Source of the DNA: Octopus sinensis
Lineage: Eukaryota
Length of the DNA: 43,050 nt
Assembly: GCF_006345805.1 (NCBI RefSeq)
Contig: NW_021831899.1
Coordinates: 1 to 43,050, forward strand
Reading direction: 5' to 3'
Shown here: positions 1,241-43,050 of the stretch, piece by piece
Layout of the letters: every line of letters begins with the position of its first letter
How positions within the stretch are numbered: the stretch's first letter is position 1
Position numbers and translations under genes: made by a program
The notes under the pieces: generated by a model
Seen by the model: only the letters and a program-made list of their open reading frames with translations
What the model was told of the DNA's origin: nothing
The model's database searches: none

Positions 1241-1407
1241 ATCCTTATAAAAAGCAAAGTTTGTATGTTAACCGTTAAAGACACTAAATAAAATTGATAA
1301 TATTTCAAATTTTTCATGTCATTTTAATTTAACCATTATGCATATAACTGTGTGCTTATTTTCCGAAAACGGAATGGAATTGTCGAGTTGGTGGTGTATT
1401 GCCTCCA

Positions 1408-7820: not shown

Positions 7821-7858
7821 TCTTTCTGTTGAAGAGCATAGGCTTGAAATGTCAAAAA
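7821..7858 (+). ncRNA. Decayed minimal type I hammerhead ribozyme relic (PLE-type)
   Basis: tcttt-CTGTTGA-agagc atag gctt-GAAAT-GTC-aaaaa: stem I, a core with A6>U, stem II and a GUC site; several changes look like CpG decay. Confidence 0.45.
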
Positions 7859-9859: not shown

Positions 9860-10155
9860 ATCTATCTATCTAAATATCTATCTGTCTATCTGTCTGTCTG
9901 TCTGTCTGTGTGTGTGTGTGTGTGTGTGTGTCTTTATGTCTGTGTCTGTCCTTCACCACTGTTTGATGATTGATTTTGGTATGTTTACGTTCCCGTAACT
10001 TAGTGGTTCAACAGAATAGACCGACAGAATGAGTACCAGATTTAAAAAACAAAAAAAAAAAACAAAAAAGAGAAGCTGGTTCATTCGACTAAGAATTCTT
10101 CAAGGTGGTGCCCCAGCATGGCCGCGGTTTAATGACTGAAACAAGTAAACGATAA
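9620..10155 (+). mobile_element. SINE family A with (TCTA)/(TCTG)n internal microsatellite
   Basis: Head gtgtgtggtaaaaagtttgcttcc, gtgagtggatttggtaga, tail ggtgccccagcatggccgcgg..aatgactgaaacaagtaaa. Confidence 0.8.
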
Positions 10156-10194
10156 AAAATAAAAGGAGTAATACAGGATGTTAATATTTAGATG

Positions 10195-10592: not shown

Positions 10593-11572
10593 CAAGGCCG
10601 TCGCTAAGCCCCTACGATCCCTGCGGTCGCAGGGTGGGGGGTCTCCACGGTTGAGGGGCGCCTTGTTAAGATCAAAGTACGTAGATGAGTCATCTATTTA
10701 CGTTGGTTAAAATTTTGAACAAGAATTAACTGTGTTAACTGAAAATTTCAAGAAATAAAATGGCAATACATTATTCCTGCAAATGTTCTTGTAAAACTAT
10801 CACATTGTCGCAGGAGTGGCTGTGTGGTAAGTAGCTTGCTAACCAACCACATGGTTCCGGGTTCAGTCCCACTGCGTGGAATCTTGGGCAGGTGTCTTCT
10901 GCTATAGCCCCGGACCGACCAATGCCTTGTGAGTGGATTTGGTAGACGGAAACTGAAAGAAGCCTGTCGTATATATATGTATATGTATGTGTTTGTGTGT
11001 CTGTGTTTGTACCCCTAGCATTGCTTGACAACCGATGCTGGTGTGTTTACGTCCCCGTCACTTAGCGGTTCGGCAAAAGAGACCGATAGAATAAGTACTG
11101 GGCTTACAAAGAATAAGTCCCGGGTTCGATTTGCTCGACTAAAGGCGGTGCTCCAGCATGGCCGCAGTCAAATGACTGAAACATGTAAAAGAGTAAAAGA
11201 GTATTGTACTACGAACATGTTATCAGGCTTTTGGGATTGTCTATATCAATTGAACATGAACTTAACTCTCTTGATTATTCTGAACTGATCGATGATTTCG
11301 CGAAGCGAAAAATGCGCCGTGTTTGTCTTTGAAAGTTGCTGCTGGATTATAAAAGTGTTCTTTTATTCATATCTGCAAGTATTTCTAAATAAATTAAAGT
11401 TGTACTTTAAAAGATGTTCTTTGGGATAATGTGGAATATTGAACTTCAGATAGAATAAAGTAAAATATAGCTATGAATGCGTAGATTATGAATCTTGATT
11501 GAAGGGATGGGGGCCTTGAAACAAAAAGTTGCAAGTGGGGGGGGGCGCTCTAAAAGTCACGCGATGGAGCTG
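10593..11572 (+). mobile_element. hAT (Tip100-like) internal-deletion derivative
   Basis: Degenerate TIRs caaggccgtcgc / gcgatggagctg; 8-bp TSD gcatagat (10585-10592) / gcgtagat (11573-11580); 11249-11332 encodes IEHELNSLDYSELIDDFAKRKMRRVCL*, a hATC dimerisation-domain tail. Confidence 0.78.
10810..11202 (+). mobile_element. SINE family A, well-preserved copy nested in the hAT element
   Basis: tggctgtgtgg A-box, ggttcagtccc B-box, CpGs retained, tail gtaaaagagtaaaagag. Confidence 0.9.
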
Positions 11573-12657: not shown

Positions 12658-13477
12658 AATGTGCAAAAGCAATATAATTATCAAACCGTTATGAAATGTT
12701 GGCGTGATAATCAATGTCGTCGTCGTCGTGGACGTGGACGTCATCGTTGCCGCAGCAAGTTGTTGATGGCGGTTGTAACTATTACTGCTTACGTTGTTAA
12801 GACTTTGACTTGCTTTCGTCAATCCTGGTTTGACGGTATGCTAGTGTGTATGACGAAGAGGGTTCGTCTGCCGTGTTTACCACGTTCAAGTGATTTCAAA
12901 AATGCATAGTTGCATCGCGCCCGAATCTACTTGGCAATGGTTCAACAAGTTTAAATTACAACCTCCCACCACCACCACAACCACCACCACAACCACCACC
13001 ACCACCACCACCACCAGCTCTTATAACTCCATGCAAATAAAATTATTTTCCGTTTCTTTTAATTTTTTAACAGTTGTTTTTGCAAATAAGAAAGCTAATG
13101 GGTGAAATCCATTTTAAATAATTGAGACCGTACCAAGTCGCAATCCTGGCTACGCTCATGAAGTGTATTCTTTTATATCTGTTACTCTTTTGTTGGTTTT
13201 ATTCACTGATATGTGGCCATGCTGGAGTACTACTTTGAAGGGTTTTGATCGATCAAATCGACTTAAGCGTTTTTTTAAAAGTCTGTCATTCTTTCGGACT
13301 AACCACCACCACCACCACCACCGTCATCATCATCATCATCATCATCATCATTATTGCTTTAATGTCCTCTTTTCTGTATTTGCATGGGTCGGATGAAATT
13401 ATACGAGACAGATTTCTCTATTTTCAGATACCTTTCCTGTCACCAACTTTCACTTGTTTCTAATCAAAGTAATGTTT

Positions 13478-15562: not shown

Positions 15563-18500
15563 GTGCTTTTTACATGGCATCAGCACCAGTACTTTTTATG
15601 TGACACCATCACCAGTGCTTTTTATGTGACACCATCACCAGTGCTTTTTATGTGACACCATCACCAGTGCTTTTTATGTGACACCATCACCAGTGCTTTT
15701 TATGTGGCACCATCACCAGTGTTTTTTATGTGACACCATCACCAGTGCCTTTTATGTCACACCATCACCAGCACTTTTTATGTGGCACTATCACCAGTGC
15801 TTTTTATGTGACACCATCACCAGTGCTTTTTATGTGACACCATCACCAGTGCCTTTTATGTCACACCATCACCAGCACTTTTTATGTGGCACTATCACCA
15901 GTGCTTTTTATGTGACACCATCACCAGTGCTTTTTATGTGACACCATCACCAGTGCTTTTTATGTGACACTAGCACCAATGCTTTTTATGTGACACCAGC
16001 ACCAGTACTTTTTATGTGACACTAGCACCAGTGCTTTTTATGTGGCACCATCACTAATGCTTTTTATGTGGCACCATCACCAGTGCTTTTTATGTGACAC
16101 CGTCACCAGTACTTTTTATGTGACGCTAGCACCAGTGCTTTTTATGTGACACTATCACCAGTGCTTTTTATGTGACACCAGCACCAGTACTTTTTATGTG
16201 ACACTAGCACCAGTGCTTTTCATGTGACACCAGCACTAATGCTTTTTATGTGGCACCATCACCAGTGATTTTTATGTGACACCAGCACCAGTACTTTTTA
16301 TATGACACCGTCACCAGTACTTTTTATGTGACACCAGCACTAATGCTTTTTATGTGGCACCATCACCAGTGCTTTTTATGTGACACCAGCACCAGTGCTT
16401 TTTATGTGGGACCATCACCAGTGTTTTTTATGTGACACCATCACTAATACTTTTTATGTGACACCATCACCAGTGCTTTTTATGTGGCACCATCACCAGT
16501 GCTTTTTATGTGGCACCATCACCAGTGTTTTTTATGTGACACTGTCACCAGTACTTTTTATGTGACAGCACCAGTGCTTTTTATGTCACACCATCACCAG
16601 CACTTTTTATGTGGCACCGTCACCAGTGCTTTTTATGTGACACCATCACCAGTGCTTTTTATGTGACACTAGCACCAATGCTTTTTATGTGACACCAGCA
16701 CCAGTACTTTTTATGTGACATTGCACCAGTGCTTTTTATGTGGCACCATCACTAATGCTTTTTATGTGGCACCATCACCAGTGCTTTTTATGTGACACCG
16801 TCACCAGTACTTTTTATGTGACACTAGCACCAGTGCTTTTTATGTGACACCAGCACTAATGCTTTTTATGTGGCACCATCACCAGTGATTTTTATGTGAC
16901 ACCAGCACCAGTACATTTTATATGACACCGTCACCAGTACTTTTTATGTGACACCAGCACTAATGCTTTTATGTGGCACCATCACCAGTGCTTTTTATGT
17001 GACACAGCACCAGTACTTTTTATGTGACACCGTCACCAGTGCTTTTTATGTGACACCAGCACTAATGCTTTTTATGTGGCACCATCACCAGTGCTTTTTA
17101 TGTGACACCATCACCAGTGCTTTTTATGTGACACTAACACCAATGCTTTTTATGTGACACTAGCACCAGTGCTTTTTATGTGACACTAGCACCAGTGCTT
17201 TTTATGTGACACCAGCACCAGTACTTATTATGTGACACCGTCACCAGTGCTTTTTATGTGACACCAGCACTAATGCTTTTTATGTGGAACCATCACCAGT
17301 CCTTTTTATGTGACACCAGCACCAGTACTTTTTATGTGACACATCACCAGTGCTTTTTATTGACACCAGCACAATGCTTTTTATGTGGAACCATCACTAA
17401 TACTTTTTATGTGACACCATCACAGTGCTTTTTATGTGGCACCATCACCAGTGCTTTTTATGTGGCACCATCACCAGTTTTTTTATGTGACACCGTCACT
17501 AATGCTTTTTATGTGGCACCATCACCAGTGCTTTTTATGTGACACCATCACCAGTGTTTTTTGTGACACCGTCACCAGTGCTTTTTATGTGGCACCATCA
17601 CCAGTGCTTTTTATGTGACACCGTCACTAATGCTTTTTATGTGGCACTATCACCAGTGCTTTCTATGTGGCACCAGCACTAATACTTTTTATGTGGCACC
17701 ATCACTAATGATCTAATGCTTTTTATGTGGGACTATCACCAGTGCTTTTTATGTGACAACATCACCAGTGCTTTTTATGTGACATCATCACCAGTGCATT
17801 TTATGTCACACCATCACTAATGCTTTTTATGTGGCACTATGACCAGTGCTTTTTATGTGACACCATCACCAGTGTTTTTTATGTGACACCAGCACCAGTA
17901 CTTTTTATGTGGCACCATCACCAGTGTTTTTTATGTGACACTATCACCAGTGCTTTTTATGTGACACCATCACTAATGCTTTTTATGTGACACCATCACC
18001 AGTGCTTTTTATGTGACACTATCACCAGTGCTTTCTATGTGGCACCATCACCAGTGTTTTTTATGTGACACCGTCACCAGTGCTTTTTATGTGACACCAT
18101 CACCAGTGCTTTTTATGTGGGACCATCACCAGTGTTTTTTATGTGACACCATCACTAATACTTTTTATGTGGAACCATCACCAGCACTTTTTATGTGGAA
18201 CTATCACCAGTGCTTTTTATGTGACACCATCACCAGTGCTTTTTATGTGACACCATCACCAGTGCTTTTTATGTGGGACCATCACCAGTGTTTTTTATGT
18301 GACACCATCACTAATACTTTTTATGTGACACCATCACCAGTGCTTTTTATGTGGCACCATCACCAGTGCTTTTTATGTGGCACCATGACCAGTGTTTTTT
18401 ATGTGACACCTTCAACAGTGCTTTTTATGTGACACTGTCACCAGTACTTTTTATGTGACAGCACCAGTGCTTTTTATGTGACACCATCACCAGTGCTTTT

Positions 18501-21500
18501 TATGTGACACCATCACCAGTGCTTTTTATGTGACACCATCACCAGTGCTTTTTTTGTGACACCATCACTAATGCTTTTTATGTGACACCAGCACTAATAC
18601 TTTTTATGTGGGACCATCACTAATGCTCTAATGCTTTTTATGTGGCACTATCACCAGTGCTTTTTATGTGACACCATCACCAGTGCTTTTTATGTGACAT
18701 CATCACCAGTGCATTTTATGTGACACTAGCACCAGTGCTTTTTATGTGGCACCATCACCAGTGTTTGTTATGTGACACCATCACCAGTGCTTTTTATGTG
18801 ACACCATCACTAATGCTTTTTATGTGGCACTATCACCAGTGCTTTTTATGTGACACCATCACCAGTGTTTTTTATGTGACACCAGCACTAAAGCTTTTTA
18901 TGTGGCACCATCACCAGTGCTTTTTATGTGACACCAGCACCAGTACTTTTTATGTGACACTAGCACCAGTGCTTTTTATGTGGGACCATCACCAGTGTTT
19001 TTTATGTGACACCATCACCAGTGCTTTTTATGTGACACCATCACTAATGCTTTTTATGTGACACCATCACCAGTGTTTTTTACGTGACACTGTCACCAGT
19101 GCTTTCTATGTGGCACCATCACCAGTGTTTTTTATGTGACACCGTCACCAGTGCTTTTTATGTGACACCATCACCAGTGCTTTTTATGTGACACCATCAC
19201 CAGTGCTTTTTATGTGGCACCATCACCAGTGCTTTTTATGTGGCACCATCACCAGTGTTTTTTACGTGACACCATCACCAGTGCTTTTTATGTCGCACTG
19301 TCACCAGTGCTTTTTATGTGACACTAACACCAATGCTTTTTATGTGACACTAGCACCAGTGCTTTTTATGTGACACTAGCACCAGTGCTTTTTATGTGAC
19401 ACCAGCACCAGTACTTATTATGTGACACCGTCACCAGTGCTTTTTATGTGACACCAGCACTAATGCTTTTCATGTGGAACCATCACCAGTCCTTTTTATG
19501 TGACACCAGCACCAGTACTTTTTATGTGACACCATCACCAGTGCTTTTTATGTGACACCAGCACTAATGCTTTTTATGTGGCACCATCACCAGTGCTTTT
19601 TATGTGACACCAGCACCAGTGCTTTTTATGTGGGACCATCACCAGTGTTTTTTATGTGACACCATCACTAATACTTTTATGTGACACCATCACCAGTGCT
19701 TTTTATGTGGCACCATCACCAGTGCTTTTATGTGGCACCATCACCGGTTTTTTATGTGACACTGTCACCAGTACTTTTATGTGACAGCACCAGTGCTTTT
19801 TATGTCACACCATCACCAGCACTTTTTATGTGGCACCGTCACCAGTGCTTTTTATTGTGAACACCACACCAGTGCTTTTTATGTGACACTAGCACCAATG
19901 CTTTTATGTGACACCAGCACCAGTACTTTTATGTGACATTGCACCAGTGCTTTTTATGTGGCACCATCACTAATGCTTTTTATGTGGCACCATCACCAGT
20001 GCTTTTTATGTGACACCGTCACCAGTACTTTTTATGTGACACTAGCACCAGTGCTTTTTATGTGACACCAGCACTAATGCTTTTTATGTGGCACCATCAC
20101 CAGTGATTTTTATGTGACACCAGCACCAGTACATTTTATATGACACCGTCACCAGTACTTTTTATGTGACACCAGCACTAATGCTTTTTATGTGGCACCA
20201 TCACCAGTGCTTTTTATGTGACACCAGCACCAGTACTTTTTATGTGACACCGTCACCAGTGCTTTTTATGTGACACCAGCACTAATGCTTTTTATGTGGC
20301 ACCATCACCAGTGCTTTTTATGTGACACCATCACCAGTGCTTTTTATGTGACACTAACACCAATGCTTTTTATGTGACACTAGCACCAGTGCTTTTTATG
20401 TGACACTAGCACCAGTGCTTTTTATGTGACACCAGCACCAGTACTTATTATGTGACACCGTCACCAGTGCTTTTTATGTGACACCAGCACTAATGCTTTT
20501 TATGTGGAACCATCACCAGTCCTTTTTATGTGACACCAGCACCAGTACTTTTTATGTGACACCATCACCAGTGCTTTTTATGTGACACCAGCACTAATGC
20601 TTTTTATGTGGAACCATCACTAATACTTTTTATGTGACACCATCACCAGTGCTTTTTATGTGGCACCATCACCAGTGCTTTTTATGTGGCACCATCACCA
20701 GTGTTTTTTATGTGACACCGTCACTAATGCTTTTTATGTGGCACCATCACCAGTGCTTTTTATGTGACACCATCACCAGTGTTTTTTATGTGACACCGTC
20801 ACCAGTGCTTTTTATGTGGCACCATCACCAGTGCTTTTTATGTGACACCGTCACTAATGCTTTTTATGTGGCACCATCACCAGTGCTTTTTATGTGACAA
20901 CACCACCAGTGTTTTTTATGTGACACCATCACTAATGCTTTTTATGTGGCACTATCACCAGTGCTTTCTATGTGGCACCAGCACTAATACTTTTTATGTG
21001 GCACCATCACTAATGATCTAATGCTTTTTATGTGGGACTATCACCAGTGCTTTTTATGTGACAACATCACCAGTGCTTTTTATGTGACATCATCACCAGT
21101 GCATTTTATGTCACACCATCACTAATGCTTTTTATGTGGCACTATGACCAGTGCTTTTTATGTGACACCATCACCAGTGTTTTTTATGTGACACCAGCAC
21201 CAGTACTTTTTATGTGACACTAGCACCAGTGCTTTTTATGTGGCACCATCACCAGTGTTTTTTATGTGACACTATCACCAGTGCTTTTTATGTGACACCA
21301 TCACTAATGCTTTTTATGTGACACCATCACCAGTGCTTTTTATGTGACACTATCACCAGTGCTTTCTATGTGGAACCATCACCAGTGTTTTTTATGTGAC
21401 ACCGTCACCAGTGCTTTTTATGTGACACCAGCACTAATGCTTTTTATGTGGAACTATCACCAGTGCTTTTTATGTGACACCATCACCAGTGCTTTTTATG

Positions 21501-24500
21501 TGACACCATCACCAGTGCTTTTTATGTGGGACCATCACCAGTGTTTTTTATGTGACACCATCACTAATACTTTTTATGTGACACCATCACCAGTGCTTTT
21601 TATGTGGCACCATCACCAGTGCTTTTTATGTGGCACCATGACCAGTGTTTTTATGTGGGACACCTTCACCAGTGCTTTTTATGTGACACTGTCACCAGTA
21701 CTTTTTATGTGACAGCACCAGTGCTTTTTATGTGACACCATCACCAGTGCTTTTTATGTGACACCATCACCAGTGCTTTTTATGTGACACCATCACCAGT
21801 GCTTTTTTTGTGACACCATCACTAATGCTTTTTATGTGACACCAGCACTAATACTTTTTATGTGGGACCATCACTAATGCTCTAATGCTTTTTATGTGGC
21901 ACTATCACCAGTGCTTTTTATGTGACACCATCACCAGTGCTTTTTATGTGACATCATCACCAGTGCATTTTATGTCACACCATCACTAATGCTTTTTATG
22001 TGGCACTATCACCAGTGCTTTTTATGTGACACCATCACCAGTGTTTTTATGTGACACCAGCACTAAAGCTTTTTATGTGGCACCATCACCAGTGCTTTTT
22101 ATGTGACACCAGCACCAGTACTTTTTATGTGACACTAGCACCAGTGCTTTTTATGTGGGACCATCACCAGTGTTTTTTATGTGACACCATCACCAGTGCT
22201 TTTTATGTGACACCATCACTAATGCTTTTTATGTGACACCATCACCAGTGCTTTTTATGTGACACTATCACCAGTGCTTTCTATGTGGCACCATCACCAG
22301 TGTTTTTTATGTGACACCGTCACCAGTGCTTTTTATGTGACACCATCACCAGTGCTTTTTATGTGACACCATCACCAGTGCTTTTTATGTGGCACCATCA
22401 CCAGTGCTTTTTATGTGGCACCATCACCAGTGTTTTTTACGTGACACTGTCACCAGTACTTTTTATGTGACAGCACCAGTGCTTTTTATGTGACACCATC
22501 ACCAGTGTTTTTTATGTGACACCATCACCAGTGCTTTTTATGTCGCACTGTCACCAGTGCTTTTTATGTGACACCAGCACCAGTGATTTTTACGTGACAC
22601 CAGCACCAGTGCCTTTTATGTCACACCATCACCAGCACTTTTTATGTGGCACCGTCACCAGTGCTTTTTATGTGACACCATCACCAGTGCTTTTTATGTG
22701 ACACTAGCACCAATGCTTTTTATGTGACACCAGCACCAGTACTTTTTATGTGACATTGCACCAGTGCTTTTTATGTGGCACCATCACTAATGCTTTTTAT
22801 GTGGCACCATCACCAGTGCTTTTTATGTGACACCGTCACCAGTACTTTTTATGTGACACTAGCACCAGTGCTTTTTATGTGACACCAGCACTAATGCTTT
22901 TTATGTGGGACCATCACCAGTGATTTTTATGTGACACCAGCACCAGTACTTTTTATGTGGGACCATCACCATGTTTTTTTTTTATGTGACACCATCACTA
23001 ATACTTTTTATGTGACACCAATCACCAGTGCTTTTTATGTGGCACATCACCAGTGCTTTTTATGTGGCACCATCACCAGTGCTTTTTATGTGACAACTGT
23101 CACCAGTACTTTTATGTGACGCACCAGTGCTTTTTATGTGACACACCATCACCAGCAGCTTTTTATGTGCACACCGTCACCAGTGCTTTTTATGTGACAC
23201 CATCACCAGTGCTTTTATGTGACACTAGCACCAATGCTTTTTTGTGACCCCAGCACCAGTACTTTTTTGTGACATTGCACCAGTGCTTTTTATGTGGCAC
23301 CATCACTAATGGCTTTTTATGTGGCACCATCACCAGTGCTTTTTATGTGACACCGTCACCAGTACTTTTTATGTGACACTAGCACCAGTGCTTTTTATGT
23401 GACCCCAGCACAATGCTTTTTATGTGGCACCATCACCAGTGATTTTTATGTGACACCAGCACCAGTACATTTTATATGACACCGTCACCAGTACTTTTTA
23501 TGTGACACCAGCCACTAATGCTTTTTATGTGGCACCATCACCAGTGCTTTTTATGTGACACCAGCACTGCAACCAGTACTTTTTATGTGACACCGTCACC
23601 AGTGCTTTTATGTGACACCGCACTAATGCTTTTTATGTGGCACCATCACCAGTGCTTTTTATGTGACACCATCCACCAGTGCTTTTTATGTGACCTACCC
23701 CAATGCTTTTTATGTGACACTATCACCAGTGCTTTTTATGTGACACTAGCACCAGTGCTTTTTATGTGACAACACAGCACCAGTACTGTATTATGGACAA
23801 CCGTCACCAGTGGCTTTTTATGTGACACCACACCAATGCTTTTATGTGGAACATCCACCAGTCCTTTTTTTATGTGACACCAGCACCAATACTTTTTATG
23901 TGTGCACATCCATCACCAGTGCTTTTTATGTGACACCAGCACTAATGCTTTTTAGTGGAACCATCACTAATACTTTTTATGTGACACCATCACACAGTGC
24001 TTTTTTAGTGCAACCATCACATAGTGCTTTTTATGTGGCACCATCACCAGTGTGTTTTTATGTGGACAACCGTCACTAATGCTTTTTATTGTGGCACCAT
24101 CACCAGTGCTTTTATGTGACACCATCACCAGTGTTTTTTATGTGACACCGTCACCAGTGCTTTTTATTGTGGCACCATCACCAATGCTTTTTATGTGACA
24201 CCGTCACTAATGCTTTTTATGTGGCAACACCATCACCAGTGCTTTTTATGTGACACCACACCAGTGTTTTTATGTGACACCATCACTAATGCTTTTATGT
24301 GGCACTATCACCAGTGCTTTCTATGTGGCACCAGCACCGGTGTTTTTATGTGACACCAGCACTAATGCTTTTTATGTGGCACCATCACCAGTGCTTTTTA
24401 TGTGACACCAGCACCAGTACTTTTTATGTGACACTAGCACCAGTGCTTTTTATGTGGAACCATCACCAGTGTTTTTTATGTGGCACCATCACTAATGCTT

Positions 24501-26413
24501 TTTATGTGGCACTATCGCCAGTGCTTTTTATGTGACACCATCATCAGTGCTTTTTATGTCACACCATCACTAATGCTTTTTATGTGACACCATCACCAGT
24601 GCTTTTTATGTGACGCTATCACCAGTGCTTTCTATGTGGCATTATCACCAGTATTTTTTATGTGACACCGTCACCAGTGCTTTTTATGTGACACCAGCAC
24701 TAATGCTTTTTATGTGGAACCATCACCAGTGCTTTTTATGTGACACCATCACCAGTGCTTTTTATGTGACACCATCACCAGTGCTTTTTATGTGACACCA
24801 TCACCAGTGCTTTTTATGTGACACCATCACCAGTGCTTTTTATGTGACACCATCGCCAGTGCTTTTTATGTCACACCATCACTAATGCTTTTTATGTGAC
24901 ACCAGCACTAATACTTTTTATGTGGCACCATCACTAATGCTCTAATGCTTGTTATGTGGCACTATCACCAGTGCTTTTTATGTGACATCATCACCAGTGC
25001 ATTTTGTGTCACACCATCACTAATGCTTTTTATGTGGCACTATCACCAGTGCTTTTTATGTGACACCATCAGCAGTGTTTTTTATGTGACACCAGCACTA
25101 ATGCTTTTTACGTGGCACCATCACCAGTGCTTTTTATGTGACACCAGCACCAGTACTTTTTATGTGACACTAGCACCAGTGCTTTTTATGTGGCACCATC
25201 ACCAGTGTTTGTTATGTGACACCATCACCAGTGCTTTTTATGTGACACCATCACTAATGCTTTTTATGTGACACCATCACCAGTGCTTTTTATGTGACAC
25301 TATCACCAGTGCTTTCTATGTGGCACCATCACCAGTGTTTTTATGTGACACCGTCACCAGTGCTTTTTATGTGACACCAGCACTAATGCTTTTTATGTGG
25401 AACCATCACCAGTGCTTTTTATGTGACACCATCACCAGTGCTTTTTATGTGACACCATCACCAGTGCTTTTTATGTGACACTATCACCAGTGCTTTCTAT
25501 GTGGCACCATCACCAGTGTTTTTATGTGACACCGTCACCAGTGCTTTTTATGTGACACCAGCACTAATGCTTTTTATGTGGAACCATCACCAGTGCTTTT
25601 TATGTGACACCATCACCAGTGCTTTTTATGTGGAACCATCACCAGTGCTTTTTATGTGACACCATCACCAGTGCTTTTTATGTGACACCGTCACCAGTGC
25701 TTTTTATGTGACACCAGCACTAATGCTTTTTATGTGGAACCATCACCAGTGCTTTTTATGTGACACCGTCACCAGTGCTTTTTATGTGACACCGTCACCA
25801 GTGCTTTTTATGTGGAACCATCACCAGTGCTTTTTATGTGACACCATCACCAGTGCTTTTTATGTGGCACCATCACTAATGCTTTTTATGTGACACCAGC
25901 ACTAATGCTTTTTATGTGGAACCATCACCAGTACTTTTTATGTGGCACCATCACCAGTGCTTTTTATGTGACACCGTCACCAGTGCTTTTTATGTGGAAC
26001 CATCACCAGTGCTTTTTATGTGACACCATCACCAGTGCTTTTTATGTGGCACCATCACCAGTGTTTTTTATGTGACACCATCACCAGTGCTTTTTATGTG
26101 ACACCATCACCAGTGCTTTTTATGTGGCACCATCACTAATGCTTTTTATGTGACACCAGCACTAATGCTTTTTATGTGGCACCGTCACTAATGCTTTTTA
26201 TGTGCACTATCACCAGTGCTTTTTATGTGACACCATCACCAGTGCTTTTTATGTGACACCATCACCAGTGCTTTTTATGTGGCACCATCACGAATGCTTT
26301 TTATGTGCCACTATCACCAGTGCTTTTTATGTGACACCATCACCGGTGTTTTTTATGTGACACCGTCACCAGTGCTTTTTATGTGACACCTGCACTAATG
26401 CTTTTTATGTGAC
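15563..26413 (+). repeat. 26-bp satellite array, ~415 monomers, consensus gtgctttttatgtgacaccatcacca
   Basis: The 26-nt period is visible throughout; three monomers give the 26-aa pseudo-repeat in the ORF track. Length/26 is about 417. Confidence 0.98.
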
Positions 26414-26447
26414 TCCAGGGTCACCAGGTACTTTGCATGACGAAATC
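26411..26447 (-). mobile_element. RTE-tail element, continuation (right flank of the satellite)
   Basis: gggtcaccaggtactttgcatgacgaaatc matches the reverse complement of 41115-41144 (gggtcaccaagtaacttgcaagacaaagat). Confidence 0.75.
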
Positions 26448-32284: not shown

Positions 32285-32967
32285 TAATACTTCATAGAGT
32301 GATGACAACCATATCCTGCATAGTTACAGGCTGCCCTTTGGCAAGACATAGCACCCGTTCAGCTACCCAGCCAGGGATATGATGAAGTCATGGACTGAAG
32401 CATGGTGGATTATGAAGAGGGAGCGCAAGAGCTGAGCTGAGTCAACACAGTGCTCCTTACATTGATGTTAAGCAGAGGAATCCTAGAATATCAAATGGTC
32501 AGGGCCACCAAACTCTATCAAGAGAGAGTAACTGCAGTGCATCCATGGTTTTATAATCAGCTGATGAAAGATTCACTGTGACTCAAGCTCCTTATTCAAA
32601 TTCATAATAATGGAATTGGATGGTGACAGAGAGTCATGGGAATCCATGAAAGCAGCGAAAAGAAGGAATATTTTTGAAGTGTGAATAAATAAGCATCACA
32701 TTTGACAGAATAATCTGAATGCTAAAGAATTAATGAAGATAATTCTTCACAACTTCATTTCAGTCATTTAGTCAACGTAATTCTACAGCTTTTCAAGTCA
32801 TTTCTACACAACATTGTAGGTATATTGGTATTTATTGTCTTTCATACCTTAACTAGTTTCAGTCATTGGACTGTTGCCATGCTGGAGTACTGCCTTCAAA
32901 GTTTTAACCAATCATATCAACCTTGGTATTATTTCATTTGGTGTTTATTTTAACAATCTGCATAGGT

Positions 32968-33340
32968 ACAGGCATAGCTTAGTGGTTAGAAGCTTGCTTC
33001 CCAACCAAATGGGTTCAGGTTCAGCCCCACTGTGTGGCACCTTCAGCAAGCGCCTTCTACTATAGCCTCGATCCAACCAAAACCTTGTGAGTGGACTTGT
33101 ATATATAATATATATATATATATGTATGTATCTCTTTGCATGCATCTTTGTGTCTGTGTTTGCCCTCCATCACTGCTTGACAACTGGTGTTGGTGTGTTT
33201 ACGTCCCCGTAACATAATGGCTTGGCAAAGAGACTGATAGAATAAATATTAGACCTAATAAAGAAGTCTTGGGGTTGAATTGTTTGATAAGCTAGTGCTC
33301 CAGCATGACCACAGTCAAATGACTGCAACAAATAAAAGAA
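32968..33340 (+). mobile_element. SINE family A
   Basis: Head tagcttagtggttagaagcttgcttccc..ggttcagcccc, tail gtgctccagcatgaccacagtcaaatgactg. Confidence 0.82.
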
Positions 33341-33384
33341 TATATATGAACTAAACAGAACAGGAGGATATACGTGGATATACT

Positions 33385-33706
33385 CTTTTACTTGTTTCAG
33401 TCATTTGACTGTGGCGATGCTGGAGCACCGCCTTTAGTCGAGCAAATTGACCCCAGGACTTATTCTTTGTAAGCCTATTACTTATTCTATCAGTCTCTTC
33501 TACCAAACCGCTAAGTTATGGGAACATAAACACACCAGCATCGGTTGTCAAGCGATGTTGAGGGGACAAACACAGACACAAACATACACACACACACACA
33601 TTATATATATATGTATATATAATAATAAATATTAGGGAATAAATCCAAATTTACAGGGAAAAATCCAATTTTAGTAAAATATTATATAATTATTTATTTA
33701 TTATTT

Positions 33707-35328: not shown

Positions 35329-38283
35329 CATCCAGGAAGTAAGGTGGAGAGGAGGTTCTGCTAGGCTCCTCACAGGCCAGGAACACAGGTACAAGATTTT
35401 CTGGGCAGGAACACTGACTGACGGGTCGGGGGCGTGGGTATACTTCTTGCGGAGAAATGGGTAGGTAAGGTAATCGAGGTAGTCAGAGTAAGTGACAGAG
35501 TAATTAAAATTAGATTAGTTCTTCACCATAGACAGCTACATCATCATCTCGGCATATGCCCCTCAACCGGGGCTACCGGAAGGACAAAAAGACCAATCTA
35601 TGACACCCCTATTGCGGACTACCTCATTGACAAATGACAGTGACCTTCTCTTTGTGGCAGGTGATTTCAATGGACATGTTGGACGACATGTCGGGGCTTC
35701 CATGGCGTCCATGGAGGCTACGGTTTTGGCTCTCGAAATGAGGAAGGAACCAGGCTGCTGGAGTTCTGCGATGCAAATGACCTTATGGTCTGCAATACCC
35801 ACTTCAGGAAACCCACCTCTCACCTAGTCACCTACCGTTCTGCTTGCAGACACACCCAGCCAGATTGACTACATCCTTGCCAGGAAAAGGGAAAGAGGGC
35901 TGATTATAAATGCCAAAACCTTCCCAGTGAAGAATGTACTCCCCAACATAGATTAGTAGTTAGCGACTTCAGGATCAGAGCTAAATGGTTGCCCAGAAGA
36001 AGACCAGCTTGGAGGAGAAGGGTCTGGAAGCTTAAAGATCCTGCAAATGGACAGAGATTTAGAGACATACTACTCGAAGCCTCTGACGAAATAGAAGGGG
36101 ATATAGCTTCACTTAATGTGGGAAGACAACTGGAGATTCCTACGGGACAATCTGCTGACAATCTGCTGACAGCCACTGACCAGATCTGTGGATGGAGCAG
36201 CAAAGTACCATCTCGACCCAGAGTAACATGGTGGTGGAACACTGTGGTTGACAGGGCTATTAGACAAAAGAGACAGGCTTGGAAGGACTGGAAGACGTGG
36301 TAGCAGGGAATTGTATCAGACAGCCAAAAGGGAAGCTAGGAGACAGGTTTATTTAGCCAGAGGGGAAGCGGATAAGAAAAATTTGCCAATGTTCTGAGCC
36401 GTGAGGATGAAAGACTTGAGGTATTCGTGTTGCAAGACAGTGTGTGAGAGAGAATCGGATGTGGTAGGAGAGAAGTGTGTTCGCATGGATGATGGTTCAC
36501 TTGCGCTAAATGAGGATGCAAAGAGAGGTTTGGAGATGCCACTATGAAAGGTTGCTGAATAAGAAAATGAATGGATAAAGAGAGTCTGCCGAATGTTGAC
36601 CCAACAGAGGAACCATCTATCCGAGTTGATAGTTCCGTGGTAGCTAAGGCAATTAGAAGCATGAAGACAGGGAAAGCCCCAGGCCCATCAGGAATTACTG
36701 GCAGAGATGCTCAAAATATCTGGCAGTGTCGGCTATAACCTAGTCACCCGTATAGTGTCAACCAGTGATACACGAAGGAGTCATCCCAATGACTGGTGTA
36801 GCAGCATACTAGTCAACTGCTACAAAGGTAAAGGTGATGCCCTAGATACAAATAATTACAGAGGTATCAAGCTGGTGGATCAGGTAATGAAGGTTACGGA
36901 GAGGGTCATAGCCCAACTAATTAGAGAGAGAGTTAGTTTAGATGAGATGCAGTTTGGGTTTGTCCCAGGGAAAAGCACCACTGATGCTATATTCATGGTA
37001 AGGCAGCTGCAGGAGAAATACCTAGCCAAAGATAAGCCCTGTACTTGGCTTTCGTTGACATGGAGAAAGCCTTGATAGGGTCCCCCGTTCCCTCATCTGG
37101 TGGTCATGAGGAAACTAGGGATAGATGAATGGCTGGTGAGGGCTGTGCAAGCCATGTACAGAGATGCCGTAAGTAAGGTTTAGAGTTGGCAGCATGTCAC
37201 ACAAGAATTCAAGGTAGAGGTTGGGGTCCACCAGGTTCAGTACTCAGCCCCCTCCTATTTATCATAGTCCTCCAGGCAATTGTGGAGGAATTCAAGACAG
37301 GTTGCCCCTGGGAGCTCCTCTATGCTGACGACCTCGCTCTAATCGCTGAGTCACTATCAGAACTGGAGGAGAAGTTCCAGGTGTGGAAGGAGGGTTTAGA
37401 ATCGAGGGGCCTTAGAGTCAACCTAGCTAAAACCAAAGTACTAATAAGTAGAAAGTTAGAAAATCCACAAATATCCTCAGGAAGATGGCCCTGCTCTCGA
37501 TCTGTAGAAAAGGTGTAGTAGAAACTCTATAAGATGTACCCAGTGTAAGCCATGGACACACATAGAGGTGCAGCAATGTCAAAGGTAGGCTAACTGGGAA
37601 GATAGTTTTTGTATGTGGCAGATGCTCTGGAGCATTGACCTCCGAAAATCTGCAGAAACCAACTTCCTCACTTTCCACTTCCGGGGGAAAAACTAGAAGT
37701 AGTTGATAGCTTCCGCTATCTAGGTGACCAAGTCAGTAGTGGGGGCGGGTGCGCCTGAAAGTGTAACTGCTAGAATAAGATAGCCTGGGCAAAGTTTAGG
37801 GAGCTCTTACCTCTGCTGGTGACTAAAGGCCTCTCGCTCAGAGTAAAAGGCAGACTGCATGATGCATGTGTACGAACAGCTATGCTACATGGCAGTGAAA
37901 CATGGGCCGTGACTGCTGAGGACATGCGTAAGCTTGTGAGGAACGAAGCCAGTATGCTCCGATGGATGTGTAATGTCAGTGTACTTACTCGACAGAGCGT
38001 TAGTACCTTGAGAGAAATGTTGTACCTAAGAAGCATCAGTTGTTGTGTGTGCAAGAGAGACGATTGCGCTGGTATGGTCATGTGGCGAAATGGATGAAGA
38101 TAGGTGTGTGAGAAAGTGCCAATCCCTAGCAGTTGAGGGAACCTGTGGAAGAGGTAGACCCAGGAAAACCTGGGACGAAGTGTGAAGCAGCACGACCTTC
38201 GGACGTTAGGTCTCACCATGGAAATGACTAGAGACCGAGACCTATGGAAGTATGCTGTGCGTGAGAAGACCCGGCAAGACTAG
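35329..38283 (+). pseudogene. RTE ORF (AP endonuclease + reverse transcriptase), broken by many small indels
   Basis: ORF-track fragments 35434-35637, 35600-35827, 35989-36303, 36707-37075, 37186-37518 and 37819-38097 are collinear parts of one protein; terminal TAG at 38281-38283. Confidence 0.95.
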
Positions 38284-41334: not shown

Positions 41335-41379
41335 TTTATATATATATACACATACACATACACATAGATATGCATGTAT

Positions 41380-41427
<48 letters not shown>

Positions 41428-41513
41428 TATATATTTGTGTGTGTGTGTGTGTGTATAGTTGTAAATATATTTACATATGCATGTATACATACATACATAT
41501 ATATATATTATAC

Positions 41514-41563
<50 letters not shown>

Positions 41564-41584
41564 TATATATTATATTATATAAAT

Positions 41585-41649
<65 letters not shown>

Positions 41650-41790
41650 ATATTTATATGTATATATATATGTATATATACATGTATAGATATATTGCAT
41701 GTGTGTGTGTATTACAAATAATAATTCCTTTGAAAGAATCTTTTCATTTCATTTGTTATTATATTATATATATATAATACATATATATAT
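41335..41790. repeat. (TA)n-rich microsatellite block
   Basis: Direct reading. Confidence 0.95.
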
Positions 41791-41813
41791 AGTTTTCATG
41801 ACCACCTCACATG

Positions 41814-41880
41814 TATGGCCCATGCTACTAAAAGTTTCACGCACATGGAATCTACACACGTTCTTCAGGCAGCAGCCACA
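41814..41880 (-). ncRNA. Type I hammerhead ribozyme (PLE terminal repeat, sense to the PLE ORF)
   Basis: tgtggc-tgc-tgc CTGAAGA acgtgtgt..atgtgcgt GAAAC tttta GTA| gca-tgg-gccata; intact core, predicted cleavage between 41826 and 41825. Confidence 0.75.
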
Positions 41881-42439
41881 TCATCAGACTTTAGCAGTTT
41901 AAATACTGTACTGAATTGAAAAACAGGGTGAAAGAAACCCAATATTGGAACAGATTATGTGGAAGATACCATTAGGCTGACTAGACAGAGTGTAAATCTC
42001 AAAATGCGACGATCGAATGGTGTAAAATTGGATGGATAAAATTTTGAGGAACAAAAAATATTTATACAATGTAAGGAATGATAGGGCAGATTTAAAAAAG
42101 GGGGTATGTACAAATAATAAGCTAAACATATAAGTGCTCCAGCATGGCCGCAGTCAAATGACTGAAACAAGTAAAAGAGTAAAAGAGTAAAGAGTATCAC
42201 AAGAAACATTTTTTTTTAAATGGCGGGGGACATGTGCAAACATAATTAACAATACTATATATGTAAAGAAAATGTAAATAAATACATATAATAATAATAT
42301 TAAAATATATATTGAAATATAAGATATTTGAAATATTATAAAATACAAAGTTATAAAAATATGAATATGTGATGATATGCTAATAAGAAAAATATATAAA
42401 TATATAAGTAAATTAATTGTTGACCAGTTCGTCAGGTAG

Positions 42440-42740
42440 CTTCCAAGTTTTTGAAGAAATTTATGCATATGTTTACAACTATTAAAAATTTCCGATCATG
42501 AGTTCAAGATTCAGTTTGGTATCTTGGATCTAAATAGGATATGTGCCCTCTCTGCCAAACACATCTTGCATTTATTAGAACCATTTATGTATGATGTAAA
42601 TTTTTCTATAATTTTCCATTTAATTCTGTATGGTATTTTCTTACATTTCAGTTCCCAAACATAGCTGGAAAGCCTCATGGTATTGCATTTCTCGCTGTAA
42701 TGGAATGTTGATAAATGATTTGCTTAACGTTTTTTGAATG
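42440..42740 (-). pseudogene. Penelope-like element ORF C-terminus
   Basis: RLSSYVWELK..IKWKII..Y..NKCKMCLAERAHI..ILNS*SEIFNSCKHMHKFL, typical of the end of Penelope/Poseidon-type ORFs; two in-frame stops. Confidence 0.8.
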
Positions 42741-42850
42741 CTCCTTCACATAGCCTGATATATGTCTTATCAGCTATATACACATTGTTGTGTATATAGC
42801 TGATAATATATATATATATATATATATATTTAAACTGCTTAAGTCCGATG

Positions 42851-42919
42851 GTATGGCTGCCACCTGAAGAACATTCACAGGTTCCATGTGCATGAAACTT
42901 TTAGTAGTGTGGGCCATAC
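42851..42919 (+). ncRNA. Type I hammerhead ribozyme (inverted PLE terminal repeat), stem II decayed
   Basis: gtatggc-tgc-cac CTGAAGA ..GAAAC tttta GTA| gtg-tgg-gccatac; predicted cleavage between 42906 and 42907. Confidence 0.7.
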
Positions 42920-43050
42920 ATGTGAGGTGGTCATGAAAAAGAATATTTACTCTTGTTAGGTGGAGTACTCTTTTGTTGTTAACGCTAGACATACAGACCC
43001 ATTTTTTTTCTTATATATATCATCATCAACATCATATATATATATATATA

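What the first reader, a model, noticed from the sequence alone, without database searches (positions are those of the whole stretch)
41814..42919. Two inverted type I hammerhead ribozymes with compensatory base changes
Both copies keep CUGAAGA, GAAAC, a short stem III (ACU-uuu-AGU) and a GUA cleavage site. The proximal stem I is tgc/gca in one copy and cac/gtg in the other, a double compensatory change. The 3x3 internal loop (tgc/tgg) is identical and a further 6-7-bp helix follows. Covariation plus a conserved bulge, as used for loop I-II tertiary contacts, indicates selection on ribozyme structure in the source lineages. This extended form differs from the minimal relics at 7821 and 40897.
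Basis: partly seen in the sequence, partly recalled or inferred. Interest (0 to 1): 0.85.

Follow-up and report, generated by a model that had tools for sequence, protein, structure and literature searches.

The report
Dead Penelope-like retrotransposon with two hammerheads
The two inverted hammerhead-ribozyme motifs are real, but they are the two 3' ends of one decayed Penelope-like retrotransposon insertion in what is probably an octopus genome. This arrangement is already described for such elements, so the finding is ordinary.

Summary
There are two 113-nt inverted arms (41793-41905 on the minus strand, 42827-42939 on the plus strand), 87% identical. Each carries a type I hammerhead core: CUGAAGA, then GAAAC-UUUU-AGUA, with predicted cuts at 41826|41825 and 42906|42907. 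Such a motif is not expected by chance.

Between the arms, on the minus strand, lies a stop-ridden C-terminal GIY-YIG endonuclease remnant (42789-42448). It carries the motifs published for the 'Hydra' clade of Penelope-like elements (PLEs). It is followed by a 3'UTR and the left hammerhead. The right arm is the inverted, 5'-truncated short copy typical of PLE insertions. It has a probable extra 'tail' (42940-42997), and the whole insertion sits in (TA)n. A related copy on an Octopus vulgaris chromosome has the same architecture, mirrored.

The stem I 'double compensatory change' exists. However, all four substitutions are YG/CR transitions of the kind CpG decay produces, and the window is strongly CpG-depleted (o/e 0.39). 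A neutral model gives this pattern with p of about 0.03-0.13. The right copy also has two uncompensated mismatches at the base of stem II.

Selection on the ribozyme is plausible in the active source elements. It is not shown by these two copies, and nothing suggests a function at this locus. Rfam models miss even the intact relatives.

The parts
41337..41792 (.). (TA)n-rich microsatellite, left flank of the insertion (target)
   Evidence: TRF finds period 2 over 41337-41695. The TA-rich sequence continues up to 41792.
41793..41905 (-). Left arm: the 3'-terminal 113 nt of the long (main) PLE copy. It ends directly in (TA)n, with no tail.
41814..41880 (-). Hammerhead L. Helix I distal 41880-41875 / 41819-41814; internal loop 41874-41872 / 41822-41820; helix I proximal UGC 41871-41869 / GCA 41825-41823. 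Core CUGAAGA 41868-41862. Helix II plus loop 41861-41839 (8 bp, four of them G.U). GAAA 41838-41835. Helix III 41835-41827. H17 = 41826, predicted cut 41826|41825.
41906..42447 (-). AT-rich 3'UTR of the long copy. It contains a fragment (42134-42189) of an unrelated short repeat that has at least 8 copies in the window.
42448..42789 (-). Decayed C-terminal GIY-YIG-type endonuclease of a Hydra-clade Penelope-like element. One reading frame, with three in-frame stops (42726-42724, 42513-42511, 42498-42496). It keeps YI(G>R)L..FKKR, CKMC-LAE (CxxC before the conserved E) and LNS*SE..CKH (CxH after the conserved N).
   Evidence: tblastn E = 1e-16 to 2e-25; phmmer finds 1220 relatives; motifs as described in PMC8557442 section 11.
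42765..42808 (.). Palindrome (two 18-19-nt arms around a 4-nt spacer) at the 5' truncation point of the long copy. One arm is coding sequence (VYIADK) and the other is its inverted duplicate.
42805..42826 (.). (TA)11 spacer between the two head-to-head copies
42827..42939 (+). Right arm: short, inverted, 5'-truncated copy of the element's 3' end
42851..42919 (+). Hammerhead R. Helix I distal 42851-42857 / 42913-42919; proximal CAC 42861-42863 / GUG 42907-42909. Core 42864-42870. Helix II region 42871-42893 (canonical register broken by C.A and A.C; a shifted register gives 6 pairs and one U.C mismatch over 7 positions, with a 2-nt bulge). GAAA 42894-42897. Helix III 42897-42905. H17 = 42906, predicted cut 42906|42907.
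42940..42997 (+). Probable PLE 'tail': an extra 3' extension present only on the right copy, collinear with the tail of the O. vulgaris copy (TGGAGTACTyTTTT and neighbouring sequence).
   Evidence: Alignment A2. Local alignment against shuffles gives p = 0.0035. nhmmer extends the right-copy match to 43006.
43012..43050 (.). TA-rich sequence, right flank

Best explanation
The region 41793 to about 42997 is one old, dead insertion of a Penelope-like retroelement (PLE) of the 'Hydra' clade into a (TA)n microsatellite, in what is probably an octopus genome.

The main copy lies on the minus strand. It is 5'-truncated inside its GIY-YIG endonuclease domain. It then runs through a 3'UTR to the element's own type I hammerhead ribozyme and ends 33 nt after the predicted cleavage site. 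Head-to-head with it, on the plus strand, lies a short inverted copy of the same 3' end, with hammerhead and an extra tail.

Inferred mechanism, taken from the PLE literature and not shown here:
- The PLE enzyme cuts both strands of the target.
- Both 3'-OH ends prime reverse transcription near the 3' end of PLE RNA, at one of two start sites. This would explain a tail on one copy only.
- The result is two outward-facing 3' ends, which form an inverted repeat.

In active elements the hammerhead is thought to process PLE transcripts. At this locus the two ribozymes are relics. The left one is structurally intact but weak. The right one has a damaged helix II.
For: (1) Endonuclease remnant between the arms, on the same strand as the left hammerhead. 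tblastn gives E down to 2e-25, with three in-frame stops.
(2) Clade motifs. The relatives form a large family (1220 hits). Longer members carry what motif inspection suggests is the C-terminal part of a reverse transcriptase, a CxCX5C linker, CxxC before E and CxH after N. These are the diagnostic features published for the Hydra clade. That clade is also described as inserting into (TA)n and carrying canonical hammerheads (PMC8557442 section 11).
(3) Inverted copies are known. PLE insertions often have an inverted 5'-truncated copy at the 5' end and a tail at one end only (PMC8557442 section 6). Dual min-hammerheads on opposite strands, 100-700 bp apart, were reported in 2014 (PMC4209133). 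A PLE enzyme cleaves and extends both strands and starts reverse transcription at two internal sites (PMC11167929).
(4) Independent locus. On Octopus vulgaris chromosome OX597833.1 (L025), a different subfamily shows the same layout, mirrored. An inverted copy of about 115 nt carries an intact hammerhead: CUGAUGA, a 9-bp helix II, GAAAC-UAUU-AGUA, and helix I GUGC/GCAC. It abuts the 5'-truncated body, which continues through the endonuclease ORF, the 3'UTR, a decayed hammerhead and a tail into (TA)n.
(5) Further relatives carry hammerhead remnants, or an intact hammerhead, downstream of the endonuclease ORF (L026-29, L035, L034, L037).
(6) The helices are kept between subfamilies although the sequences differ. 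Helix II is ACGUGUGU/AUGUGCGU here and AUAUGUUGA/UCAACAUAU in O. vulgaris. The third pair of helix III is U-A in the cephalopod copies and C-G in L037.
Against: - No full-length element of this exact subfamily was recovered, so the reverse transcriptase and the CxCX5C linker are seen only in relatives.
- Pfam does not recognise the endonuclease family. The only hint is a GIY-YIG match at E = 0.023 on one member.
- A confident AlphaFold model (pLDDT 91) gives no significant PDB match. The best GIY-YIG hit is Hpy188I at E = 2.3.
- The tail homology is modest (p = 0.0035).
- No target-site duplication can be read in (TA)n.
- The 13% divergence between the arms, and the (TA)11 spacer, would also fit two separate insertions into the same microsatellite.
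- Hammerhead catalysis is untested. The motif departs from the usual rules (A10.1-U11.1 instead of G-C), and the thermodynamic fold prefers pairing the core with the U-run of helix III.
Confidence: 0.85

Rival explanations
1. Same element family, but two independent insertions. A long 5'-truncated copy and a separate short solo 3' end landed in the same (TA)n microsatellite in opposite orientations. In this reading the differences between the arms reflect two source variants.
For: - The arms differ by 13%, and 13 of the 15 differences lie inside the ribozyme segment.
- The core and the last 30 nt are identical.
- Only one copy has the tail.
- A (TA)11 spacer separates the two copies.
- The Hydra clade targets (TA)n.
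- Most PLE hammerheads occur as single truncated copies.
Against: The same head-to-head arrangement, with no spacer, occurs at the O. vulgaris locus. It is also described as a typical product of a single PLE insertion. Two hits in the same orientation pattern and with matching extent would be a coincidence.
Confidence: 0.2
2. One reading: two ribozymes kept by selection, either in the source lineages or at this locus. The extended helix I with its internal loop would make tertiary contacts, and the covariation would prove structural constraint.
For: - The core is intact in both copies.
- There are two compensatory pairs in helix I.
- In a shifted helix II register, 5 of the 6 differences turn G.U pairs into Watson-Crick pairs.
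- No difference falls in the core or in helix III.
- An internal loop plus distal helix recurs in the O. vulgaris subfamily.
- PLE hammerhead families are reported to be full of covariation (PMC4209133).
Against: - All four helix I changes are CpG-decay products, with a neutral p of 0.03-0.13 in a genome with CpG o/e 0.39.
- The right copy has C.A and A.C at the base of helix II in the canonical register.
- The surrounding element is dead, with three stops and a 5' truncation.
- At the O. vulgaris locus the main copy has lost its core altogether.
- Fold z-scores are only -0.4 to -1.3.
- The helix II register was chosen after seeing the data.
Confidence: 0.1
3. A MITE or foldback-type DNA transposon whose 113-bp terminal inverted repeats happen to contain a hammerhead-like string.
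For: Formally it is a 1147-bp unit with 113-bp terminal inverted repeats.
Against: - No target-site duplication is visible.
- The interior is a retroelement endonuclease remnant plus 3'UTR, oriented with one arm.
- Homology extends beyond the right arm into the tail, on one side only.
- There are no other copies in the window.
- Relatives have the segment once, downstream of the ORF, in sense orientation.
Confidence: 0.03
4. A non-LTR retrozyme, meaning a tandem hammerhead repeat that gives rise to circular RNAs.
For: It has type I hammerheads and low GC. Animal retrozymes are proposed to derive from PLE terminal repeats (bioRxiv 10.64898/2026.07.22.740005; PMC7229834).
Against: The two hammerheads are on opposite strands and not in direct tandem. 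No repeat unit of 170-400 bp is present. PLE coding sequence lies between them.
Confidence: 0.03

Closest known systems
Hydra clade of Penelope-like elements (Craig et al. 2021, PMC8557442)
   Same: - C-terminal GIY-YIG-type endonuclease without the CCHH motif, with CxxC before the conserved E and CxH after the conserved N.
- CxCX5C linker, seen in relatives only.
- Insertion into (TA)n.
- Hammerhead near the 3' end.
- Inverted 5'-truncated copy, and a tail at one end.
- Host range of the clade includes Mollusca.
   Different: The window holds only a dead 1.2-kb 3' fragment, with no reverse transcriptase. No full-length master of this subfamily was seen. The endonuclease remnant is only about 43-48% identical to any relative found.
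PLE-associated minimal hammerheads (Cervera and de la Pena 2014, PMC4209133)
   Same: - Type I hammerhead in PLE terminal sequence.
- Long helix II (8 bp) and short proximal helix I.
- Mostly found as truncated single copies, or as pairs on opposite strands 100-700 bp apart.
- Expected to have low activity as a monomer.
   Different: - Helix III here is 3 bp with a non-palindromic UUU loop, instead of absent or 1-2 bp and palindromic.
[quoted passage not shown]
- The 10.1-11.1 pair is A-U, not G-C.
- Helix I is extended by an internal loop and a 6-7-bp distal helix.
Canonical metazoan type I hammerheads of non-LTR retrozymes and satellite repeats (PMC7229834)
   Same: Same catalytic core, type I topology and short helix III.
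   Different: Those occur in direct tandem repeats of about 170-400 bp, have a 4-bp helix II and a 6-bp helix I with conserved loop-loop contacts, and give circular RNAs. None of this is seen here.

Membership tests
Hammerhead ribozyme, type I | Conserved core: C3 U4 G5 A6 N7 G8 A9, G12 A13 A14, A15.1-U16.1, and H17 not G | tested here: met
   Both copies have CUGAAGA ... GAAA ... U-A, forming a GUA triplet.
Hammerhead ribozyme, type I | Three helices around the core, with helix I open | tested here: met
   Left copy: helix I 3 bp, 3x3 loop, then 6 bp; helix II 8 bp; helix III 3 bp. Right copy: helices I and III are intact, but helix II has two mismatches at its base, or a shifted register with a 2-nt bulge. 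The motif was never produced in 300 random windows under the strict descriptor.
Hammerhead ribozyme, type I | G10.1-C11.1 closing pair of helix II | tested here: not met
   It is A-U in both copies and in the O. vulgaris relative.
Hammerhead ribozyme, type I | Match to the Rfam hammerhead covariance models | tested here: not met
   No hit at gathering score, nor at E <= 10 on 1.35 kb. The intact relatives in L025 and L037 are also missed, so this test has little weight here.
Hammerhead ribozyme, type I | Site-specific self-cleavage | not testable with these tools
   Needs an in vitro transcription assay. RNAfold places the hammerhead fold 9-15 kcal/mol above the minimum free energy structure.
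Penelope-like element, Hydra clade | C-terminal GIY-YIG endonuclease lacking CCHH, with CxxC before the conserved E and CxH after the conserved N | tested here: met
   The window remnant reads ..NKCKMCLAERAHIL.. and ..LNS*SEIFNSCKHMHKF... The family consensus reads CxLCLxEK ... LNxRxExxxxCRH.
Penelope-like element, Hydra clade | GIY-YIG fold or Pfam membership of the endonuclease | tested here: inconclusive
   Pfam GIY-YIG matches only at E = 0.023 on P0028. The AlphaFold model (pLDDT 91) has a beta-beta-alpha-alpha-beta-alpha order of elements, which I judge consistent with a GIY-YIG domain. Foldseek finds nothing significant, and the best GIY-YIG hit is Hpy188I at E = 2.3. The profile search against PDB sequences found nothing.
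Penelope-like element, Hydra clade | Reverse transcriptase plus CxCX5C linker upstream of the endonuclease | tested here: inconclusive
   Absent from the window because the copy is 5'-truncated at about 42789. Present by motif inspection in relatives P0098, P0130 and P0010 (YRDDGL.., FLDV.., SNHP.., CNCRxxxxxC). Pfam RVT_1 does not score those partial ORFs. No phylogeny was made.
Penelope-like element, Hydra clade | Insertion into (TA)n | tested here: met
   (TA)n lies to the left (41337-41792), between the copies (42805-42826), and TA-rich sequence lies to the right (43012 onward). The same holds at L025, L026 and L027.
Penelope-like element, Hydra clade | Hammerhead near the 3' end, an inverted 5'-truncated copy, and a tail at one end | tested here: met
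   for the window. for the O. vulgaris locus. The tail is supported only moderately (p = 0.0035).
PLE min-hammerhead (Cervera and de la Pena 2014) | [quoted passage not shown] | tested here: not met
   Helix III is ACU/AGU with a UUU loop. There are 0 unpaired nucleotides (left copy) or 2 (right copy, shifted register). The criteria are quoted.
Non-LTR retrozyme | Direct tandem repeats of about 170-400 bp, each with a hammerhead | tested here: not met
   The two motifs are on opposite strands, and no tandem unit is present.
MITE or foldback DNA transposon | Terminal inverted repeats flanked by a target-site duplication, with no retroelement body | tested here: not met
   Inverted repeats are present but no duplication is visible. 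A retroelement endonuclease remnant lies inside, and the homology is asymmetric because of the tail.

The most novel reading that the evidence does not exclude
The two arms of a single PLE insertion may not be neutral copies of one template.

In both loci examined, the differences between the paired inverted copies are concentrated inside the ribozyme segment, while the flanking 5' and 3' parts are identical:
- Window: 13 of 15 differences fall in 69 of 113 nt.
- O. vulgaris L025: 7 substitutions and 2 deletions fall in about 58 of 125 nt.

In the window, most of these differences also preserve base pairing.

If this is general, paired arms would record diversification of the structured ribozyme at the RNA or reverse-transcription level. 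Possible causes are error-prone copying, template switching on the hairpins, or RNA quasi-species. That is the process Cervera and de la Pena (2014) invoked to explain the extreme variability of PLE hammerheads.
Probability: 0.1. Interest if true: 0.5.

Novelty: new member of a known kind. Interest (0 to 1): 0.2.

Why it matters
It matters little beyond annotation. The locus can be labelled as a decayed Hydra-clade Penelope-like element with its two terminal hammerhead relics, and it adds a cephalopod example of this ribozyme variant (A10.1-U11.1, 3-bp helix III, extended helix I).

There are two practical lessons:
- Rfam's hammerhead models do not detect these PLE-associated variants.
- 'Compensatory' changes between two repeat copies in a CpG-depleted genome can arise from CpG decay of a GC-rich helix. 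They should not be read as selection without a larger alignment.

Tried and rejected
- Rfam cmscan on the window at gathering score and at E <= 10: no hammerhead. It also missed the intact relatives, so the negative result was set aside.
- Exact-pattern scans for further copies. Metagenome contigs gave 0. Viral contigs gave 0, 3 and 0 for three patterns. Prokaryotic genome contigs gave 21. All 24 matches lack the helices and are chance.
- Protein searches with the 70-aa endonuclease piece and with the antisense translation of the arms, hoping to pull other copies from short-read assemblies: no candidates. No further copy of this exact subfamily could be obtained, so a real covariation test (R-scape style) was not possible.
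- nhmmer with the arm alignment against the window and all fetched loci: no extra copy in the window.
- Chance motif: rejected by the shuffles.
- The idea that the antisense of the right arm encodes the CxC linker. One tblastn alignment (P0004) runs through it, and it reads TCECSSGGSH in frame. I rejected this as coincidence for three reasons. The intervening residues come from (TA)n and a palindrome. The left arm lacks the CxC. In relatives the hammerhead segment lies downstream of the ORF and is unrelated to the linker coding sequence.
- An ADAR-type editing signature in the arm differences: the directions of change are mixed, so it is not supported.
- Structure and PDB searches to confirm the GIY-YIG fold: inconclusive.
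Full report
**What is in the sequence**

The window is eukaryotic: 39% GC, many microsatellites, LINE reverse-transcriptase fragments and a 26-bp satellite. At the reported place there is an inverted repeat with arms 41793-41905 and 42827-42939. Each arm is 113 nt, they are 87% complementary, and they lie 921 nt apart. Read in the sense of the motif, the left arm is on the minus strand and the right arm on the plus strand, so the two motifs point outward.

Both arms contain CUGAAGA, a 23-nt helix II region, then GAAAC-UUUU-AGUA. A helix I follows with a 3-bp proximal part, a 3x3 internal loop and a 6-7-bp distal helix.

The arm occurs only twice in the window.

**Is it more than chance?**

A hammerhead descriptor run over both strands finds only this locus. 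First-order Markov random windows give 0.047 hits per window with the relaxed descriptor and 0 in 300 with the stricter one. The bare linear string matched 24 times by chance in about 600 Gb of prokaryotic and viral contigs, and none of those matches has both helix I and helix II. The motif is therefore real.

It is not thermodynamically conspicuous. Fold z-scores are -0.4 to -1.3. The minimum-energy fold pairs the core with the U-run of helix III, and the hammerhead fold lies 9-15 kcal/mol above it.

No Rfam hammerhead model matches, even at E <= 10 on 1.35 kb. The same search also misses a structurally intact relative in Octopus vulgaris and one in a marine metagenome. The Rfam result therefore says nothing either way.

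**What lies between the arms**

Translating the interior on the minus strand gives, in one frame with three stops..NNVYIADKTYIRLCEGAFKKR*ANHLSTFHYSEKCNTMRLSSYVWELKCKKIPYRIKWKIIEKFTSYINGSNKCKMCLAERAHILFRSKIPN*ILNS*SEIFNSCKHMHKFLQK...

A phmmer search of 1.84 billion representative proteins with one piece gave 1220 hits at E <= 0.001. tblastn of these hits back on the window gives E = 1e-16 to 2e-25 over 42789-42448.

Longer relatives (P0098, P0130, P0010) carry, by motif inspection, the following parts:
- the C-terminal part of a reverse transcriptase;
- a CxCX5C linker;
- the YIG..FK.R..H block;
- CxxC just before a conserved E;
- CxH after a conserved N.

This is the published description of the 'Hydra' clade of Penelope-like elements. 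[quoted passage not shown] Its insertions are almost always into (TA)n, canonical hammerheads are present, and its hosts include Mollusca (PMC8557442).

Pfam does not recognise the family; the only hint is GIY-YIG at E = 0.023 on one member. A confident AlphaFold model (pLDDT 91) has a beta-beta-alpha-alpha-beta-alpha order of elements that I judge consistent with a GIY-YIG domain. Foldseek gives no significant PDB match; Hpy188I, a GIY-YIG enzyme, appears at E = 2.3. The fold assignment therefore rests on motifs and on the literature.

**Anatomy of the insertion**

On the minus strand the long copy has these parts, in order:
- It starts, 5'-truncated, inside the endonuclease domain at about 42789. 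A small palindrome (42765-42808) marks the junction.
- It continues through the endonuclease remnant to about 42448.
- An AT-rich 3'UTR follows (42447-41906). It contains a fragment of an unrelated short repeat at 42134-42189.
- It ends with the 113-nt hammerhead segment (41905-41793), directly against (TA)n.

On the plus strand, separated from the long copy's 5' end by (TA)11, lies the 113-nt inverted copy. About 57 further nucleotides (42940-42997) follow it. These are collinear with the sequence that follows the hammerhead segment in the O. vulgaris relative (alignment A2; p = 0.0035 against shuffles; nhmmer extends the match to 43006). The left copy lacks this extension.

This is the known PLE insertion structure:
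- strong 5' truncation;
- often an inverted 5'-truncated copy adjacent to the 5' end, so that inverted repeats flank the unit;
- a 'tail' often present at one end only (PMC8557442).

Cervera and de la Pena already reported pairs of PLE hammerheads on opposite strands 100-700 bp apart (PMC4209133). A purified PLE enzyme cleaves and extends both DNA strands and starts reverse transcription at two internal sites, and the interval between those sites is the tail (PMC11167929). Priming on both strands gives two outward-facing 3' ends, which is the geometry seen here. This mechanism is inferred from the literature and is not shown by my data.

**An independent locus**

The closest named relative, P0052, is a 'hypothetical predicted protein' of Octopus vulgaris. 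Its locus on chromosome OX597833.1 (L025) has the same layout, mirrored:
- An inverted copy of about 115 nt carries an intact hammerhead: GUGC|CUGAUGA|AUAUGUUGA...UCAACAUAU|GAAAC-UAUU-AGUA|GCAC.
- It lies head-to-head with a 5'-truncated body made of the endonuclease ORF, a 3'UTR, a hammerhead that has lost its core, a tail and then (TA)n.

Other copies from short-read assemblies (L026-29, L034, L035) carry decayed hammerheads downstream of the endonuclease. A marine-metagenome relative with reverse-transcriptase motifs plus endonuclease (L037) has CUGAUGA...GAAAC-C-AAU-G-GUA about 115 nt after its stop codon.

Across these subfamilies the helices persist while their sequences change. Helix II differs entirely between the window and O. 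vulgaris. The third pair of helix III is U-A or C-G. This supports a hammerhead at the family level, in agreement with the published statement for the clade.

PLEs are a known repeat class in O. vulgaris, with an old expansion (PMC13282606). The host of the window is probably an octopus. That is an inference from these relatives and from a shared short repeat.

**The 'compensatory' changes**

The arms differ at 15 positions, 13 of them transitions. In proximal helix I the left copy has UGC/GCA and the right copy CAC/GUG.

All four changes, however, are TG versus CA at the same dinucleotide. That is what CpG decay produces from an ancestral CG. Three observations support this reading:
- Two related copies (L034, L035) still read AGUA|GCGC on the 3' strand. 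The others read GCAC, ACAC, GCAU or GUGU.
- The window is strongly CpG-depleted (CpG o/e 0.386, TG 1.39, CA 1.49).
- Three further differences (positions 20, 47, 66 of the arm) are also CG versus TG or CA.

Under a neutral model, each CpG of a GCGC/GCGC helix decays to TG or CA at random. The observed result (two compensated pairs, all pairs canonical) then has probability 0.03 at 70% decay and 0.13 at full decay. At least one compensated pair appears in about 13% of trials.

In the same right copy, the CpG pair at the base of helix II decayed in the incompatible combination (ACG/CGU to ACA/CAU). That gives C.A and A.C mismatches next to the core.

- No difference touches the core or helix III.
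- In a shifted helix II register, five of the six differences turn G.U pairs into Watson-Crick pairs. That register was chosen after seeing the data.
- Parsimony with the O. vulgaris subfamily as outgroup would make UGC/GCA ancestral.

With two copies these readings cannot be separated. Selection on the ribozyme in active source elements is plausible and is what the literature reports. These two relics do not demonstrate it, and nothing suggests selection or function at this locus. The element is 5'-truncated and carries three stops. At the O. vulgaris locus one of the two hammerheads is already destroyed.

**The 'conserved bulge'**

The 3x3 loop is identical in the two copies only because they are 87% identical overall. 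In the O. vulgaris subfamily the corresponding internal loop is 5x6 with a different sequence, although a distal helix of 6 bp again follows. An extended helix I may be a feature of these cephalopod PLE hammerheads. A tertiary contact cannot be tested here.

The geometry is a 3-bp proximal helix I against an 8-bp helix II. This is unlike the canonical 6/4 arrangement in which loop-loop contacts are known (my own knowledge, and PMC4209133).

**Comparison with known kinds**

The motif is a type I hammerhead by core and topology. It sits where PLE hammerheads sit. It shares their long helix II and short proximal helix I.

It differs from the 2014 'min-HHR' definition in three ways:
- Helix III is 3 bp with a non-palindromic loop.
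- There is no single bulged nucleotide after A9.
- The 10.1-11.1 pair is A-U.

It is not a retrozyme, because there is no direct tandem. It is not a MITE, because it has no target-site duplication, has a retroelement body and has an asymmetric tail.

**Verdict**

The object is an ordinary, dead insertion of a known class of retroelement, so interest is low.

One thing remains unexplained. In both loci the differences between the paired arms cluster inside the ribozyme segment, while the flanks are identical. With n = 2 this is only a lead.

Noticed in passing
Its consensus reads UCUUUC-CUGAUGA-A-GAGC-loop-GCUU-GAAA-UG-UY-AAAAGA. That is a PLE-type minimal hammerhead with a bulged nucleotide after A9, a 4-bp helix II and no helix III. 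Each copy has one core mutation (A6>U in one, U4>C in the other). They are probably relics of a second PLE family.
   Followed up: partly
window 41793-41905 vs 42827-42939; L025 9548-9662 vs 10745-10860: Differences between the two inverted copies of one insertion cluster inside the ribozyme segment, while both flanks are identical. In the window, 13 of 15 differences fall in 69 of 113 nt. In L025, 7 substitutions and 2 deletions fall in about 58 of 125 nt. CpG hotspots explain part of this in the window. The rest is unexplained.
   Followed up: partly
window 42765-42808: Near-perfect palindrome (cttatcagctatatacaca ttgt tgtgtatatagctgataa) exactly at the 5' truncation point of the long copy. 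One arm is endonuclease coding sequence. It may be a snap-back or template-switch scar from insertion. It produces spurious microRNA-like Rfam hits.
   Followed up: no
window 42134-42189; also 853-941, 10108-10170, 11148-11203, 13178-13231, 32849-32891, 33294-33428; L025 653-697 and 18418-18483: A short repeat (CCAGCATGGCCGCAGTCAAATGACTGAAACAAGTAAAAGAG...) with at least 8 copies in the window. It often occurs as close inverted pairs, like the ends of a MITE. One fragment lies inside the PLE 3'UTR. It is shared with the O. vulgaris locus at 92-95% identity.
   Followed up: no
window 15563-26417: A 10.9-kb satellite array of a 26-bp unit (GTGCTTTTTATGTGACACCATCACCA), about 417 copies at 85% match.
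   Followed up: no
window 36707-37518 (+): Stop-interrupted reverse-transcriptase fragments of a LINE-like element (Pfam RVT_1 at E = 1e-5 and 1e-12). A further ORF at 1352-1969 looked LINE-like to me by eye only; Pfam found nothing in it.
   Followed up: partly
L025 9548-9662 (-), L037 about 1300-1360 (+): Rfam release 15 hammerhead models give no match at E <= 10 to hammerheads that are structurally intact by inspection in Hydra-clade PLEs. Rfam-based scans therefore under-report this class.
   Followed up: yes
window 42830-42924 (-): The antisense of the right arm is open in the same frame as the endonuclease remnant and reads ..TCECSSGGSH.., resembling the CxCX5C linker at roughly the right spacing. 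One tblastn alignment (P0004) extends through it. I judge this a coincidence, because the left arm lacks it and the gap is filled by (TA)n and the palindrome.
   Followed up: partly
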